DNA of 64,000 nt from Paragordius varius (GCA_964247055.1 OZ176050.1:11532001-11596000); one strand, 5' to 3'. Positions 51,079-63,519 are shown, numbered from the stretch's first letter. The notes: generated from the sequence alone by a model not told the origin. Program-made: numbers and translations.

Positions 51079-51856
51079 TTAACTGAAATATTTTTCAAAT
51101 AAAGATTTTAATTTTGAATCTTTGACTGGTTGTTCATGGTACTCAGATTGTGATGAAGGAAATAAAATTTTAGATTTATAGGATAAATCAGGGTCGTCTT
51201 TTGGGTTAGTTCCAACCAAAGTGTTAAACAATTTCGTAAAAAAGCTTTCACGTGGATGCTGCGGTTCATGTAAAGCAATATCATCTTTAACATGACTTAA
51301 TTCATTTTTTATCATTGATTCGATCGGCCTTTGATGCATACTCGAAAAATCTGTATGGTCTTCCGTAACAACAGTGCCATCTGGTTTACGGATAGTTACA
51401 ATTTCTTTTATTTTATCCCCACTGGTTTCAATTACTTTAATTCGCTCATTCCCTAAATGGTCTCGTAATACACTTTTTGAAAAAGAAAACTAAATGGTAA
51501 AAATAAAAATAGTTACTGTGTGAATCTTGGGTGTATCATTATCTTGAAATACAGAATCGGTTTTATTATACTAAAATAAATTGGAATGGTATTACTTCGG
51601 GTTTAAGCATTTGATCTCTTAACGAACTTGGATTATTGGAATTAGAAAATGAAGAAAGACCTATATTTATATATGCTCAAACTTTGTTCTGGTGCTATAT
51701 CAATTTCATTGCTTAGTTGGTCAAATATTTTAAATATATCATTTGTAATTATTTTAATATCATTTCCAAACCAATCGGCTTGTCCAAAGTTTCTATAATT
51801 GATTAATATATAAATTGTTAAAACTTGTCAAAATCTTTTTCAAACCAATCAAACAT
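51079..51856 (-). CDS. HAX1: HAX1-like (HCLS1-associated protein X-1), 223 aa
   Basis: Exons 51856-51825, 51792-51683, 51660-51596, 51570-51517 and 51489-51079 total 672 nt of open frame after removing GT-AG introns of 32, 22, 25 and 27 nt. Motif SLRDQMLKP resembles HAX1 LRDSMLKYP; FSFSKSV and TIRKPDG resemble the HAX1 C-terminal region. Confidence 0.72.
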
Positions 51857-51864
51857 TTTAACAG

Positions 51865-52173
51865 ATGGAGTCTATCTCGCAAGAGTTTATTAGTGCAAAA
51901 AATCCTTTAATAGCTCGGAATTTGCAATTATCATCGGGATTAAAATTTGGCGTTGACTTTTTGGGTTACTTAGGTTTTTTGTTTTTAATATAAGGGGATC
52001 CAAAACACTTTCACTCGCTTTTTATGTTTTTCCTGGAAAAAGAAAAGAATTTACCAGTTTTAGAGCTTATAACTCTTATTCGATTGGCAACTATAGTTAA
52101 AAAAATATTTGTATATGTATATAAGGAAAATGATGAATTTACTTATTTAACATTTAATTATATTGAACTTTAA
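51865..52173 (+). CDS. TSEN34: tRNA-splicing endonuclease catalytic subunit, TSEN34/Sen34-like, catalytic domain only (95 aa as modelled)
   Basis: Exons 51865-51973 and 51995-52173 (288 nt) with a 21-nt intron that contains an in-frame TAA. Gives SGLKFGVDFLGYLGDPKHFHS...RLATIVKK, with the putative Tyr/His/Lys triad present. The 5' end may have additional upstream exons. Confidence 0.85.
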
Positions 52174-57836: not shown

Positions 57837-59714
57837 CAAAAGGTAGTGAAGTATTAAGACTGTTAAATATCTTATGAACCAAAAAATCTCGTCCAAAATA
57901 ATGAAATAAATAATTATTTAAAATTCCAAGTGAAGTAGTAAAGGATTTGAGATTCAGTATGTGGAATATGCATTCTATTCCAACTTCTTGATTTAACCGA
58001 AACTATGTCATATCCATGTTTTTGTCGATGGAAAACTAGTGTCATATTTATTTATATCTAATAACTTAATAACATGAATTGAAACCGAAACTTGCTGTGG
58101 TCGGTATTAATTCTCTGGTTCCAGTTTGACATTTAAAAAAGGCGTTTTCGTATAAAATGGTTATATCACCAAATTAAATTTGGTTCCAAATCCAGCGTTT
58201 CTTCTGTAAAAAAAGGGGTTTTTGATTTCGGTCCATTCTTTGCCCAGCGGTTCTAATTTCTGTACATTATAATTTAGAATATTCAAATAAGCTAAAATGA
58301 ATAAATAGCTTAAAATGTACATTATAAGCCACATCTATGGTGGGTTACTTTTTACTAAATGTAAAAAATTTCCGTGTTTCAAAAAGATTAAAATCATACT
58401 TTAATTATTCAAATAAAATATAAAACATAAATAAAACAGGCGAGCATTGCATTAAGTTTTTTCATTAAAAGCTTTGACGCAAAACCCAATGTGTGCTCGT
58501 CTATAAGAATCAAGACTTTATTGCCATTTAAACAAGAAGATAAAATTTTATAAAAGAGCTTTAAAAAAACATAGCGTCCGAAATCAGGGGATATAAAAAA
58601 ATAAATTAGGAAATCATATATATATATATATCCTGATATAAAAATGTATCAGGATTATCATGGTTTTGGTTTTGGCCCCGAGATAATATTGTATAAAAGA
58701 TTTTTTATACCGTTTCTATCATGTCTCAAAATAGTATGAAGTTAACAAATTAAATTAAATATATGAAAAAAGTATTTATGTGTTTGATTTAAGAGGACTA
58801 ACCCATTTTAGATAAGGCAAACTTTTGGAACCTACATCTACAAAAATTTATTTTTTTTTAAATTTTTTTTTTGCTTATGTAGTTTATATATTTTAGTGAA
58901 AATTTTTGGAATAAATCATTTAGCTTTCATAAATAATTTATTCTAAAAAATATGCGCAAATTTTGCCATTATTGAGATGGAAAACCAACACAAAAGCGTA
59001 AATAACTTTCTAAAACTCTTAATGGCCAAAACCAAAAGCACCATGATAATATTGATGTAATATCCTATCAGAAAATATTTCATCAAATTATATTTCTTAG
59101 TGGACACTGTCTTTGATAAATCTTATTATTAAAAGATGTTGTTGTTATATTATATAGAGATAAAATTTTCAGTTTTATTCTAGTTTAAGACTATAGCGCT
59201 TTTACTAAAAACAAACAGCTGATTTTTCAAAAATATAAAATCTATCAAAATATATTCGGGAAAGTTTCAAAATTAATTTAAACAAAATAATATTTTGCAT
59301 TTATGAGCCACCATTTGTTATTCAAAAATTTGCAAAAAGTATATAATTTATTAAATACGATTTACTATCATAATATTATTGATGTTATTTGGAATTTCCC
59401 AGTCGAAGATTTACAAACTTTTTAGATATTTATTTAAAATGATAGTTTCTTAACAATATATGACCTTCAGTTTTCTAAGGGCATTAAATTTAATATTAAA
59501 AATATTTAATTAGGCCTAAGTTCAAATATGTTTTCTTTAACCTTTGCGCATGATACAAAATAATTATTTTAAAAAACAATTTAAACATGCAAACAACTGT
59601 ATATTATTATAGTTGAAAATATAATTTTCGAAAGCTCTCAATGTACATTTCCCCAACCAAATTTATATTTATTGATTAAATTTCAGGTTAGTTTTAACTC
59701 ATCATATGACCTTT

Positions 59715-61990
59715 TCACTTTTTTGTCCTAGCTTACATATGGGGGTAATTTTATATTTCAGAATTTATTAATAAACTATAGTTTTGAAAGTTATTTATTA
59801 AAATATCAGCCATTGTTTAAATAAATTATATAAAAAGCTTATTTTACAGTTTTGTGCCTAAATCTTCAGCTTCAAACAAAATATTTCAACAAACAGCTGA
59901 TTTTAAAATCAAAATATATTTCGTTTTTGCTTGCAAAATGTACCCTAAAAACTGTTTAAAGTTAATTATTTATATTTCCTAATGAAAATATACATTTGTT
60001 TGTCTGTTGCATTAGTGGTTTGAAAAAATTCATACAAAAAATGGCCGCAAAAAAGTTTGGGATGAATATCTTAATCCATATTTTTTATAAAAAAAATTGG
60101 ATATAGAGTCGAGGCTAAGTATATTAAAAATCGGCTAAATACTTTAAATACTTTTTAAGATATTTAAATTAATCGCTCAAGGATTTTTTTACCTATGCAA
60201 GTATTGCAATTTATGTTTTTTGTCTGTATTGGAAATTGTAGTGATGATAATATTTTCATAGACTTATTTATTTTTTTGCATATGCAAATAAGATATCTAT
60301 TAGCTATTTACATATATAGCTTTATAATCATGCAGTGACATCATGGATTGTCCTTAATTTATATTTGTTTTTTTGATACATGTAATATACCTTCAAAAAA
60401 AATTCAATATAGAACCCGATTTTATAATAAATGTATTATCATCTTGTATTATACTAGCGTTGTGGTCGAACCCAACATAACATATATAAAATGACCTCTA
60501 AAGATAATGGAGTGTTAATCGTGTTTTGGAGCTATCTAGGGACTTTAAAAGTTTAAGAGGTGCACAAATTTATTTTTTATCGAGTACAAGAATAAAAATT
60601 GATAATAAAATTTTACCCACAGGCAAAACAGCAGTTTATTGACTATAAATTCCGGGATTCCAAATTGTAATCTCATAATACTATAATAAAGTGTTAAAAC
60701 TAATAAACTTTAAAATAAATTATTATAAAATTTTGCCACATCAAGTGAAAATTTAAACCCATAATTAGATACTAGAAGTTAGCAACCGTTTGACTCATAA
60801 TCAAAAAGCAAATTGTTTATGATGATATTTTAATTTTGATAATCTAAAGTAAACTCCATAATATTAAAGATATTTTATGGTGAACTTACAAGTGTTTCAG
60901 CTGTTTAAAGCATGGCCATAAATTATGTACAAGATCTACCACCAGAAGGTGGTTATAAAATATTTGATGTAGCGAGAAAAAAGTGTGCCTCTAAATACAA
61001 TGGTTTTGCTATAACTATAATGATAGGTTGGTTCTTTTTATCAGTCGCAATATTTCATAGTTTTCTAGCTCTTCATTTTATGAATAGAGAACAAGATTAC
61101 AAACAGTATTTGTTGCTAATATTAGATTTTTATATACGGATTTGAATGATGCGAAAATTGCATTAATGCCATTGTATACTGCAGAAATGGACAGAGTGTA
61201 TGTTAATTTTAATAATTAAGGTTCTTACGACATTTAAAGAATAAGCGCGAAAATGAGCGCATATTAATGAAGGATGTGCCTAATTGGAAAGTTGGGCATG
61301 TATTTTCCGATCCTATATTTAAAACATTACCCGAGGATTACTACTTTTCGCCTTCACACGAAGAATTTTATTCGGCAGCCGCCGGTAAATATGCTATGGA
61401 TAAATTTATTGATTTAATTATGTAATTAATAAATTGTTTGCGTTGTTATCATATAAATATCATATTTTTTAAATATAACCTAAGATAACAGAACCTGATG
61501 AGTTGTTTTTTGACTAGATTGAGCTTTTGTATTCCGTTGGTGGAACAACTTTTTAAGATTTTAAATTATATATTATTACTGTTTGGATATTTCTCGACTT
61601 TACTTTAAAAATCTTCAGTTAATTGGCGCAAAAAGTTTATGATCTCTTAAAATTGCTAAGGGTATTTTATGCTTTTAATTTCAATATAGAGGCGTATAAT
61701 TTGTAAAAGAATAAATATATTGGCACGATTTGGTTAACTTTTTTTATTTCACTATTTTGTCCTAGTTTACATATTGGCGTTGTTTCATATCCCAACAATT
61801 TAATAAACTACAGTTTGGAAAGTTATTTAAAATTTATTTATCAAACATTGTGTTCATGAATTAGATAAAAAAGCTTGTATTTTTTACACTCTTGTGACTT
61901 CAAGAGTCTAAAATTGGACAAAACACGATCGAAACAAACAGCAGTTATTTAAATCAATATATATCAAGTTTTTGCTGGTAAGTTGTCTAT
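59715..61990 (+). repeat. Pair of ~250-bp dispersed direct repeats (~59715-59960 and ~61745-61990) flanking NDUFA13
   Basis: Shared ttttgtcctag(c/t)ttacatat, taataaacta(t/c)agttt(t/g)gaaagttattta, aaaaagctt and aacaaacagc. Family not assigned. Confidence 0.6.
60912..61425 (+). CDS. NDUFA13: NADH dehydrogenase (ubiquinone) 1 alpha subcomplex subunit 13 (GRIM-19), 148 aa
   Basis: Exons 60912-61002, 61027-61105, 61126-61197 and 61221-61425 (447 nt) separated by introns of 24, 20 and 23 nt. Motifs QDLPPEGGY, IALMPLYTAEMDRVFLR, LMKDVPNWKVG and PIFKTLPED. Confidence 0.93.
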
Positions 61991-62025
61991 AAGCCTTTTA
62001 TATTTACAACCATAATATACATTTA

Positions 62026-63519
62026 CTAGCTGGCCCTGTCACGCTTTGCTGTTACGCAGTTTCACCGATAATTATTCTTAATAATTAGCAATAAGGGGTA
62101 ATGGAGATTCATATATAATAAAAAAACATTTAATAAAATTATTCTTTTACGGGTTTTTTGCATAGGCTAAAATATTTACTCGAAATTGACCATATTTAAA
62201 CTCTTCCTTATTAAAATTAATATTCAACTATCATTGGATTTATTTTAAGATTTTCGTTTTACGAAATCATGGTTAAAAGTTTTAGTTTAAAATGTTTATA
62301 CAGCTGGGATCAAAGGATATAAAAAGTAAATCATTTGTGGTCCCTTTTTAAAGGTAAGAATGATATTACACAAATTCCCGAGAAATGTATAACTTAATTC
62401 GTATGGCTTCCCAAGTTTTTTATAAATTAGCTCCAAAACCACGCCATTTTTGTATGGCCTCTCAGTTTAAACCGGTAAACTCCTACCCATATACCTATGT
62501 GGAAAAAGCGCTGAGTTAATTTCTTTGCCTTTATAAGGCAAATATTTGGAATCTTCTTTGATACCATCATAGGTTATTCGAAAAGATACTTTAACGCTAA
62601 ATAATCGTTATATGATGGCGTATTTTTAGAGGCCCTCAATTAACGGCTAATAAAAAACGCCTGACCTTTTTTACCTAGTTACGGGTAATATTTCAAACTT
62701 TTAATGAGCTCACATGGATTCTTAAATTTTCCGAAAATTAGCACCAAAACAACGCAATTTCTATATAGTGGCGCAGTTTTTGGCAGGTACCCCCTAACCC
62801 AGGGGCAGGTAAAAAGTGCTGGGCAAAATTTTTGCCATTATATGGGGAATATCTGGATTTATCATGGATTTCATATGTACTAGATTCATAGGTTTTCTGA
62901 AATTTGGTTCGAAAGGCATGCTATATCGATCACGGGTAGCCCCCTAACCAGGGGCGAAAAAAAATCGCTTATGTTTGCCTTAATTCGGGTAATACCTAGA
63001 ATCATGATTGATTTTATATGCTCTCGTTGGATTTTCGAAAAATTGCCATAAAACCAAAAAGTCATTCTATGATGGTGCAATCAGGGCGTGAAGGGCCTAA
63101 TTAACGGCTAATTTTAAAAAACCGTACAACCTAAATTTTTGCCTTGTTACGGGTAATATTTTAAGCACTTATTGAACTTATATGGCCTGATAGTTTTCTA
63201 AAATTTAGCCCCCAAGGCACGCTATTTCAATATGATAGGGCAGTTTTTAGCAGGTATATCCTTACCCAGCAGCCTATATAAAAAAACGCACGGCTAAAAT
63301 TTTTGCCTTTTAACAGGGAATATCTGGAACCTTCATCAAATTTTTACGGTCTCATACCCTGGGCGAAAAATACACGGGGTGGGCCCGAAGGAACCTTTTA
63401 AAAAAGGGCGAAGCTATTGTCGGAGCATTCATTAATGATTATATTTTTCCGATATTTAGATTAAAATGGGTCTAAAACAGAACACAAACCACGACTTTCC
63501 ATTTTTATAAATTAATAGA
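62026..63519 (-). mobile_element. Complete non-autonomous Helitron
   Basis: On the minus strand: 5' A|TCTATTAATTTATAAAAATGGAA, 3' imperfect hairpin GTAACAGC-AAA-GCGTGAC then AGGGCCAG-CTAG|T. Inserted between A and T with no TSD. Same internal tandem units as 12407 and 47266. Confidence 0.85.

What the first reader, a model, noticed from the sequence alone, without database searches (positions are those of the whole stretch)
60912..61425. NDUFA13 carries three micro-introns (24, 20, 23 nt); the 20-nt one is the smallest here
Seen: 61003-61026 GTTTTGCTATAACTATAATGATAG, 61106-61125 GTATTTGTTGCTAATATTAG and 61198-61220 GTATGTTAATTTTAATAATTAAG. Removing the first two leaves exactly 40 residues between the YNG glycine and the IALM-P proline, the spacing I recall in human and Drosophila orthologues. 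Removing the third gives ungapped DRVFLR. The internal exons are 79 and 72 nt, which I recall matches human exons 2 and 3 (needs verification). Inference: these are ancestral introns shrunk to near the physical limit rather than new insertions.
Basis: partly seen in the sequence, partly recalled or inferred. Interest (0 to 1): 0.85.

Follow-up and report, generated by a model that had tools for sequence, protein, structure and literature searches.

The report
Three tiny ancestral introns in NDUFA13
A hairworm-type animal's gene for a mitochondrial complex I subunit is interrupted by GT-AG segments of only 24, 20 and 23 bases. They lie exactly where a related hairworm, a horseshoe crab, snails and an annelid have ordinary introns, so they are old introns shrunk to about the smallest size known in animals, although no RNA could be obtained to show the cutting.

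Summary
60912-61425 (+) is a four-exon NDUFA13/GRIM-19 gene with exons of 91, 79, 72 and 205 nt (447 nt, 148 codons plus TAA). Its GT..AG segments measure 24, 20 and 23 nt at the stated coordinates.

Each exon peptide aligns without gaps and end to end to NDUFA13 of the hairworm Gordionus. That gene has 40, 40 and 41-nt introns in the same three codons and phases. The same positions, and the same 79 and 72-nt internal exons, occur in Limulus, Biomphalaria and Paralvinella; Lottia shares the positions but has an 82-nt second exon. The introns therefore predate the protostome ancestor.

With introns 1 and 2 removed, the GGY-to-proline spacing is 58 residues, as in 158 of 168 homologues.

A second individual differs by five synonymous changes and one replacement in exon 4. 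It also has two changes inside the 20-nt intron. One of these destroys the only other frame-restoring donor.

What is missing is RNA. No RNA run held the locus, and all four runs laid were genomic DNA. Intron 1 is in-frame and stop-free, so its retention is not excluded. Human exon sizes were not tested.

The scan has already noted 20-28-nt introns many times elsewhere in this genome. Published animal cases are only myxobolids and Dicyema.

The parts
60912..61002 (+). Exon 1 (91 nt): ATG, the QDLPPEGGY motif, ends with the first base of the Gly31 codon
   Evidence: Translation. Pfam GRIM-19 profile 2-22. Aligns to Gordionus P0002 residues 1-30 without gaps. Same length as Gordionus exon 1.
61003..61026 (+). 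Intron 1, 24 nt, GT..AG, phase 1 in codon 31 (Gly). In-frame and stop-free if retained (it would add 8 hydrophobic residues).
   Evidence: Sequence. Same codon and phase as introns of Gordionus (40 nt), Limulus (4441 nt), Biomphalaria, Lottia, Paralvinella, Oppia and Drosophila. Its removal is needed for the 58-residue GGY-to-P spacing seen in 158/168 homologues.
61027..61105 (+). Exon 2 (79 nt): hydrophobic membrane-helix segment, ends with two bases of the Gln57 codon
   Evidence: Translation. Aligns to P0002 residues 32-56. The 79-nt exon is shared by Gordionus, Limulus, Biomphalaria and Paralvinella.
61106..61125 (+). Intron 2, 20 nt, GT..AG, phase 2 in codon 57. Contains CTAAT, a branch-site-like motif whose second A lies 6 nt before the 3' end.
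   Evidence: Retention shifts the frame onto a TGA. Same position as the Gordionus 40-nt, Limulus 1505-nt, Biomphalaria 478-nt and Hypsibius 73-nt introns. The only alternative frame-restoring pair is 14 nt, and its donor is destroyed by the G>A variant at 61112 in run X3. Aligns to the Gordionus intron as a 20-nt internal deletion.
61126..61197 (+). Exon 3 (72 nt): the DAKIALMPLYTAEMDR segment
   Evidence: Translation. 16/22 identical to P0002 residues 59-80. Aligns to mouse NDUFA13 64-81. The 72-nt exon is shared by six other taxa.
61198..61220 (+). Intron 3, 23 nt, GT..AG, phase 2 in codon 81 (the residue after 'DR')
   Evidence: Same position as introns of Gordionus (41 nt), Limulus (504 nt), Biomphalaria (912 nt), Lottia, Paralvinella, Oppia and Hypsibius. 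Other frame-restoring GT..AG pairs would delete conserved residues.
61221..61425 (+). Exon 4 (205 nt including TAA): the FLRHLKNKRE..LMKDVPNWKVG..FKTLPED core and the C-terminal tail
   Evidence: Translation. Pfam GRIM-19, 56.2 bits. Drosophila NDUFA13 chain 8b9z_Z residues 79-134, E 8e-13. P0002 residues 82-148, E 1e-22. Five of six variants in another individual are synonymous third-position changes.
61428..61433 (+). AATAAA, a candidate polyadenylation signal 3 nt after the stop codon
   Evidence: Read directly. It could be chance in DNA this AT-rich. Not tested.

Best explanation
This is the single, functional NDUFA13 (GRIM-19, B16.6) gene of a hairworm-type animal (Nematomorpha, related to but distinct from Gordionus montsenyensis). 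It encodes a 148-residue accessory subunit of mitochondrial complex I.

The pre-mRNA carries three ordinary-type (U2, GT-AG) spliceosomal introns of 24, 20 and 23 nt. They are the orthologues of introns already present in the protostome ancestor. They measure 0.5-4.4 kb in horseshoe crab and snail and 40-41 nt in Gordionus. In this lineage they have lost almost all internal sequence. What remains is essentially a GT(A/T)T donor, a TAAT-like branch region with an A six bases from the 3' end, and the AG.

Shown: the sequence, the frames, the collinear homology, the shared positions and phases, and the polymorphism pattern. Inferred: that the spliceosome actually removes them, and where the branch point lies.
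For: - Family: the exon peptides are NDUFA13 by Pfam and by solved structures, in collinear order.
- Alignment: they abut without gaps on Gordionus NDUFA13 at residues 1-30, 32-56, 59-80 and 82-148. The missing residues 31, 57 and 81 are the split codons.
- Intron positions: exact exon chains of annotated orthologues place introns at the same three codon/phase positions in Gordionus, Limulus, Biomphalaria, Lottia and Paralvinella, with partial retention in Oppia, Hypsibius and Drosophila.
- Spacing: the GGY-to-P distance is 58 in 158/168 homologues, and equals 58 here only if introns 1 and 2 are both removed at these sites.
- Frame: introns 2 and 3 are 3n+2, and read-through runs into stops.
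- Polymorphism: in another individual's contig (X3) there are no indels across 61066-61469. Five of six exon-4 changes are synonymous (P about 0.018 for 5 or more of 6 at third positions). There are two changes inside intron 2, and one of them removes the alternative 14-nt donor.
- DNA form: four DNA runs from three studies carry the segments collinearly, and no joint at these sites was listed. So this is not an assembly error, and no DNA form lacking the segments was seen.
- Copy number: one copy in the window.
- Intron homology: the intron-2 and intron-3 sequences align to parts of the Gordionus introns.
Against: - No RNA evidence at all. No listed run holding the locus is on record as RNA, and the four runs laid were genomic-type contigs.
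- No protein of this species is in the protein libraries. The best full-length hit is 47% identical.
- Intron 1 is a multiple of three with no in-frame stop, so a retained form would still encode a plausible protein with a longer hydrophobic segment.
- The branch-site proposal rests on three introns here plus three unverified neighbours.
- The Gordionus model is an annotation (RefSeq XP_065316060.1), not a cDNA that I inspected.
Confidence: 0.85

Rival explanations
1. Only introns 2 and 3 are spliced. The 24-nt segment 61003-61026 is coding, constitutively or in a substantial share of mRNAs, and adds eight hydrophobic residues just before the membrane helix.
For: It is 3n long and has no in-frame stop. 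tblastn reads straight through it. The inserted residues are hydrophobic and adjoin the helix. Very short introns are reported to splice inefficiently in some lineages, for example microsporidia as cited in PMC13644364.
Against: It starts with GT and ends with AG exactly at the phase-1 Gly codon where seven other taxa have an intron. Retention would give a GGY-to-P spacing of 66, which is seen in none of 168 homologues. Gordionus has no such insertion.
Confidence: 0.1
2. The locus is a decaying pseudogene, and the three segments are small insertions or frameshifting junk rather than introns.
For: No expression data were obtained. The gene lies between very high-copy repeats.
Against: All three interruptions coincide with ancestral intron positions and carry GT..AG. 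Removing them gives an uninterrupted 148-codon frame with every conserved motif. Polymorphism in exon 4 is five synonymous changes to one replacement. No other copy was seen in the window.
Confidence: 0.03
3. The segments are removed by something other than the major spliceosome (DNA-level excision in somatic cells, or a non-canonical RNA process), or they are assembly artefacts.
For: Nothing positive. This is considered only because 20 nt is shorter than the spliceosome is classically thought to accept.
Against: Four runs from three studies contain the segments collinearly, and no joint at these sites was listed. The boundaries are canonical GT-AG at conserved intron sites. Introns of 20-27 nt are documented as spliced in other animals (PMC13644364).
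Confidence: 0.02

Closest known systems
NDUFA13 gene of Gordionus montsenyensis (XP_065316060.1, assembly GCA_954871325.2, locus L001)
   Same: Same protein family and nearly the same length (149 vs 148 residues). Identical exon sizes of 91/79/72. Introns in the same three codons and phases. The same AAACA|GTATTT donor at intron 2.
   Different: Its introns are 40, 40 and 41 nt, against 24, 20 and 23 nt here. The proteins are only about 46% identical, so this is a different, fairly distant hairworm.
Ultra-short introns of myxobolid Myxozoa and Dicyema japonicum (Hadjez et al. 2026, PMC13644364)
   Same: Animal GT-AG introns under 30 nt that sit at conserved positions between conserved exons. 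They have reduced splice-site motifs ('GTa', plain 'AG') and a few A residues shortly before the AG. Length classes of 20-27 nt are common there.
   Different: Those are compact genomes of highly reduced parasites in which the median intron is 22-27 nt. This is an ecdysozoan with abundant high-copy repeats, and the phylum is not mentioned in that paper. Splicing there was supported by long RNA reads; here it was not.
Tiny introns of ciliates (Stentor 15-16 nt; other ciliates), as cited in PMC13644364
   Same: Spliceosomal introns at or below 20-25 nt with a branch A a few bases from the 3' end. (The ciliate branch position is from my own knowledge and was not tested.)
   Different: These are unicellular eukaryotes, and the size class is genome-wide there. 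Their existence shows that 20 nt is not the absolute limit for a spliceosome.
NDUFA13 / B16.6 in solved complex I structures (Drosophila 8b9z, 8esw; mouse 6g2j)
   Same: Exon 4 aligns to Drosophila residues 79-134 at E 8e-13. Exons 1 and 3 align to the expected collinear stretches.
   Different: Drosophila keeps only the first of the three introns (73 nt). The membrane-helix exon is too divergent to match by sequence.

Membership tests
NDUFA13 / GRIM-19 (Pfam PF06212) | Significant match to the family profile | tested here: met
   Exon 4 alone scores 56.2 bits against a cut-off of 25 (profile 79-130/132). Exon 1 matches profile 2-22 at 22.2 bits.
NDUFA13 / GRIM-19 (Pfam PF06212) | Conserved motifs in order: QD(M/L)PPxGGY, then a hydrophobic helix, then PxxxAExDR, then LMKxVPxWxVG | tested here: met
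   All are present in exons 1-4. They correspond to the invariant columns Q7, P10, G13, G14, P72, A76, E77, R80, M97, W103 and G106 of alignment A1.
NDUFA13 / GRIM-19 (Pfam PF06212) | Fixed spacing between the N-terminal GGY and the PxxxAE motif | tested here: met
   The spacing is 58 residues in 158/168 homologues. It is 58 here with introns 1 and 2 removed, 66 with intron 1 retained, and 60 with the 14-nt alternative for intron 2.
NDUFA13 / GRIM-19 (Pfam PF06212) | Incorporation into mitochondrial complex I | not testable with these tools
   Needs proteomics or a structure of this animal's complex I.
U2-type GT-AG spliceosomal intron | GT at the 5' end and AG at the 3' end, with removal restoring one open frame | tested here: met
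   The exons sum to 447 nt, and no stop occurs until the TAA at 61423-61425.
U2-type GT-AG spliceosomal intron | Position and phase shared with introns of orthologous genes | tested here: met
   Codon 31 phase 1, codon 57 phase 2 and codon 81 phase 2 are matched in Gordionus, Limulus, Biomphalaria, Lottia and Paralvinella.
U2-type GT-AG spliceosomal intron | Branch-point adenosine upstream of the 3' splice site | tested here: inconclusive
   Each intron has a TAAT (CTAAT in intron 2) with an A 6 nt before the terminal G. Three further candidate micro-introns in the window show the same A. The sample is small, the pattern was found after the fact, and the DNA is 75-87% A+T.
U2-type GT-AG spliceosomal intron | Absence of the segment from mature mRNA | not testable with these tools
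   No run holding the locus is on record as RNA. The four runs laid are genomic-type contigs that are collinear across the introns.
Animal ultra-short (<30 nt) intron class (Myxobolidae, Dicyema; PMC13644364) | Length under 30 nt at conserved exon junctions | tested here: met
   24, 20 and 23 nt at conserved junctions.
Animal ultra-short (<30 nt) intron class (Myxobolidae, Dicyema; PMC13644364) | Reduced splice-site motifs (GTa.. / ..AG, no polypyrimidine tract) | tested here: met
   The donors are GTTTTG, GTATTT and GTATGT. The acceptors are GATAG, ATTAG and TTAAG, with no pyrimidine tract. Only three introns were examined.
Animal ultra-short (<30 nt) intron class (Myxobolidae, Dicyema; PMC13644364) | Junctions supported by transcript reads | not testable with these tools
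I did not check it.

The most novel reading that the evidence does not exclude
Hairworms would be a third, independent animal lineage with a discrete class of 20-28-nt spliceosomal introns, after myxobolids and dicyemids. Unlike the other two, this lineage is an ecdysozoan with a repeat-rich, non-compact genome that also keeps long introns. The shrinkage would be recent, because a related hairworm (Gordionus) still has 40-41 nt at the same sites. It would proceed by internal deletion down to a floor of about 20 nt, set by a donor plus a branch site 6 nt from the AG. That would separate intron miniaturisation from genome compaction. It would also give a close species pair for asking which spliceosome changes allow it.
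Probability: 0.7. Interest if true: 0.65.

Novelty: new member of a known kind. Interest (0 to 1): 0.55.

Why it matters
Introns under 30 nt were long held to be absent from animals. A September 2026 paper (PMC13644364) documents them only in myxobolid cnidarians and Dicyema, and predicts that more lineages will turn up.

This gene is a clean, self-contained example from another phylum. It has three consecutive micro-introns, each anchored to an intron position shared across protostomes. A sister-lineage gene has the same introns at twice the length.

The 20-nt intron is at the bottom of the size range noted for this genome. It is therefore a good substrate for asking how little sequence an animal spliceosome needs.

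In practice, gene finders with a minimum intron length of 30-40 nt will break genes like this one in hairworm genomes. That may contribute to apparent gene losses and low BUSCO scores; 71.6% is reported for Gordionus in 10.1101/2023.06.26.546503.

Tried and rejected
- RNA evidence. The look-up of sequencing runs listed no run on record as RNA that holds the locus. The RNA-guessed runs of the same species label held next to none of the words. Read laying on X1, X3, X5 and X6 gave only genomic-type contigs. X5 and X6 cover intergenic DNA at the same low depth as the gene, so I read them as DNA, not as unspliced RNA.
- Own-species protein. The exhaustive search with exon 4 found no protein of this species, so no annotated or transcript-derived product confirms the junctions.
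- Deeper orthologues. The word-index search with P0002 found only itself. The profile search and the Biomphalaria query returned only protostomes. Cluster look-ups gave no deuterostome or cnidarian. I therefore could not test the positions beyond protostomes, and I did not touch human DNA.
- Human exon boundaries via the literature. A search for HGVS splice names gave nothing relevant.
- De novo census of micro-introns in the window by ORF-joining. GT..AG candidates were no more frequent than decoy dinucleotide pairs, so the method has no power in this AT-rich DNA. I use it only as a list in which introns 2 and 3 and some neighbours reappear.
- Synteny with Gordionus. tblastn of ORF pieces from the Gordionus flanks against the window gave only noise.
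- Rfam on the whole window: no family.
- The repeat finder on 59400-62600: nothing of 40 nt or more. The 2-kb 'skips' are probably cross-joins of dispersed repeats.
- Rejected alternative junctions. The 14-nt alternative for intron 2 gives the wrong spacing, and its donor is absent in another haplotype. The alternative pairs for intron 3 would delete conserved residues.
Every search was exon by exon, by reference.

Full report
**What is there**

Three segments begin with GT and end with AG: 61003-61026 (24 nt), 61106-61125 (20 nt) and 61198-61220 (23 nt). They split four open pieces of 91, 79, 72 and 205 nt, which sum to 447 nt, or 148 codons plus TAA.

Read straight through, the frame survives the 24-nt segment. 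It is lost at the 20-nt segment and runs into a TGA. An AATAAA follows the stop codon by 3 nt.

**What the gene is**

I never assembled, searched or folded a joined sequence.

- Exon 1 matches Pfam GRIM-19 at profile positions 2-22.
- Exon 4 matches positions 79-130 of 132 with 56 bits, against a cut-off of 25.
- Against solved structures, exon 4 aligns to Drosophila NDUFA13 residues 79-134 (E 8e-13) and to mammalian chains from about residue 83.
- Exon 3 aligns to mouse residues 64-81, and exon 1 to residues 6-23.
- Exon 2, the membrane helix, is too divergent to match.

So the pieces are collinear parts of NDUFA13, the B16.6 accessory subunit of mitochondrial complex I. The best structural match being an insect showed that the genome is an animal's. 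Notes from earlier stages of this scan call it hairworm-like.

**The closest relative and its gene structure**

An exhaustive search with exon 4 found no protein of this species. The best full-length hit is P0002, a 149-residue protein of Gordionus sp. m RMFG-2023 (G. montsenyensis), RefSeq XP_065316060.1.

The four exon peptides align to it without gaps and end to end, at residues 1-30, 32-56, 59-80 and 82-148. The residues left over (31, 57, 81) are the three split codons.

The Gordionus locus (L001) has exons of 91, 79, 72 and 208 nt. Its introns of 40, 40 and 41 nt lie in codon 31 phase 1, codon 57 phase 2 and codon 81 phase 2. These are the same places as in the window.

Intron 2 starts with the same AAACA|GTATTT in both species. 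In a pairwise alignment the window's intron corresponds to the first 16 and last 4 bases of the Gordionus intron, with 20 internal bases missing. Intron 3 aligns to the 3' part of its counterpart. In DNA this AT-rich, that similarity is suggestive rather than proof.

**How old the introns are**

I fetched the loci of annotated NDUFA13 proteins and found the exact exon chain for each.

| Taxon | Coding exon sizes (nt) | Sizes of the three shared introns (nt) | Which of the three positions are kept |
|---|---|---|---|
| This window | 91/79/72/205 | 24/20/23 | 1, 2, 3 |
| Gordionus (hairworm) | 91/79/72/208 | 40/40/41 | 1, 2, 3 |
| Limulus (horseshoe crab) | 94/79/72/208 | 4441/1505/504 | 1, 2, 3 |
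| Biomphalaria (snail) | 88/79/72/208 | 2732/478/912 | 1, 2, 3 |
| Lottia (limpet) | 94/82/72/211 | 1962/405/831 | 1, 2, 3 |
| Paralvinella (annelid) | consistent with 91/79/72/205 | ambiguous (see note) | 1, 2, 3 |
| Oppia (mite) | 103/151/208 | 79/-/69 | 1, 3 |
| Hypsibius (tardigrade) | six exons | -/73/668 | 2, 3 (plus introns of its own) |
| Drosophila | 106/359 | 73/-/- | 1 |
| Macrostomum (flatworm) | 462 | none | none |

Note on Paralvinella: my script split its second intron artificially, but the exon sums are unambiguous.

Positions shared between ecdysozoans and spiralians mean that all three introns were present in the protostome ancestor. I could not obtain any deuterostome or cnidarian locus, and I did not examine the human gene.

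**Further support for these exact junctions**

- Spacing. In 158 of 168 fetched homologues, the distance from the second G of GGY to the P of PxxxAE is exactly 58 residues. The window gives 58 only if introns 1 and 2 are both removed at the proposed sites. Retaining intron 1 gives 66, a value not seen in any homologue.
- Alternatives for intron 2. Only two frame-restoring GT..AG pairs exist, of 20 nt and 14 nt. The 14-nt one gives a spacing of 60.
- Alternatives for intron 3. The other frame-restoring pairs would delete conserved residues.
The 40-residue Gly-to-Pro spacing is also true of Drosophila P0101.

**Population evidence**

No run on record as RNA holds the locus. The four runs I laid, from three studies, are genomic-type contigs that cover genes and intergenic DNA alike. 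They are collinear across all three segments, and no joint at these sites was listed. This rules out an assembly artefact. It also gives no sign of a DNA form that lacks the segments.

One contig from a different individual (X3, 61066-61469) has no indel and eight substitutions:

- Five are synonymous third-position changes in exon 4.
- One is a Met-to-Lys change in the poorly conserved tail.
- Two lie inside intron 2, at 61112 and 61114.

The probability of five or more of six falling at third positions by chance is about 0.018. That is the signature of a gene under purifying selection in this frame. The G>A change at 61112 destroys the GT of the 14-nt alternative. In that haplotype the 20-nt intron is therefore the only frame-restoring GT-AG choice.

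**How it most likely works**

These are ordinary U2-type introns recognised across the intron. Almost everything dispensable has been deleted.

- The donors are GTTTTG, GTATTT and GTATGT.
- There is no pyrimidine tract.
- Each intron has a TAAT (CTAAT in the 20-nt intron) whose A lies six bases before the terminal G.
- Three further candidate micro-introns of neighbouring genes in this window also have an A at that position (these were not verified by me).

This fits the published description for myxobolids and Dicyema of a few A residues shortly before the AG (PMC13644364). Even so, the branch-site assignment is an inference from very few cases.

Intron 1 is a multiple of three with no in-frame stop. 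A retained form would escape nonsense surveillance and add eight hydrophobic residues. Of the three, it is the intron whose splicing most needs RNA proof.

**Comparison with what is known**

Hadjez et al. (Mol Biol Evol, September 2026, PMC13644364) state the following:

- Introns under about 30 bp were considered absent from animals.
- Among 51 genomes, they occur only in myxobolid Myxozoa (medians 22-27 bp) and Dicyema japonicum.
- Length classes from 20 to 27 bp are abundant there.
- More lineages are to be expected.

Nematomorpha are not mentioned in that paper. The Gordionus genome paper says nothing about introns, and my literature searches found no report for hairworms.

So the kind is known. 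The lineage appears to be new, and 20 nt is at the bottom of the known animal range. It is not the bottom for eukaryotes, since that paper cites 15-16-nt introns in Stentor.

Within this scan the phenomenon is not new. Many notes and follow-ups on other pieces of this same genome describe 20-28-nt introns. They include a 20-nt intron in MCCC1, and one report claims RNA support nearby. I treated these as leads only.

**Verdict**

The reading 'ancestral introns that shrank' is supported by orthologous positions across protostomes and by a sister-lineage gene with the same introns at twice the size. The missing piece is direct RNA evidence. My confidence that all three are spliced as proposed is 0.85. 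It is higher for introns 2 and 3 and lower for the in-frame intron 1.

Noticed in passing
window 59700-60200 and 61720-62500: Very high-copy repeats flank the gene. Summed contig depth reaches about 1.3e4-3.4e5 there, against about 300-450 over NDUFA13 in run X1. Several contigs 'skip' about 2,046-2,050 nt between about 59.91 kb and 61.96 kb, with only 20-29 matching bases on the shorter side. These are probably cross-joins of dispersed repeat copies rather than a deletion of the gene. The repeat finder saw no repeat of 40 nt or more between the two sides.
   Followed up: partly
window 59500-62500 (runs X5, X6): Runs filed under two other organism labels hold this DNA at low depth, including intergenic parts, and some contigs are identical to the window. 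This could be parasite DNA inside host samples, or mislabelled or mixed samples.
   Followed up: no
window 60962-61469: Nucleotide diversity is high. There are 8 differences in 404 nt between the window and another individual's contig (X3). Two contigs in run X6 cover 60962-61095, one identical to the window and one with 7 differences in 134 nt. None has an indel in an intron.
   Followed up: partly
window 51571-51595 (-), 51661-51682 (-), 51974-51994 (+): Candidate micro-introns of 25, 22 and 21 nt in the neighbouring genes (HAX1-like and TSEN34-like according to first-reader notes) reappear in my ORF-joining list. Like the three NDUFA13 introns, each has an A six bases before the terminal G. 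I did not verify these by homology.
   Followed up: no
L001 1-2461 (-) and 3001-3571 (+): In Gordionus a TB2/DP1/HVA22 (REEP5-like) gene lies about 540 nt upstream of NDUFA13 on the opposite strand. First-reader notes place a REEP5 gene on the minus strand, ending at about 54.4 kb of this window. The neighbourhood may therefore be conserved, with about 6.5 kb of repeat-rich spacer added here. My tblastn attempt to confirm this was uninformative.
   Followed up: partly
protein P0001 (not in the window): The top-scoring hit of exon 4 in the exhaustive protein search is a 2,291-residue bacterial 'calcium-binding protein' of Nitrincola. It matches in eight short repeated stretches, the best being query residues 11-36. 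It is probably a repeat-driven chance similarity. I did not examine it.
   Followed up: no
window 1-64000: No Rfam family reaches its gathering score anywhere in the 64-kb window.
   Followed up: yes
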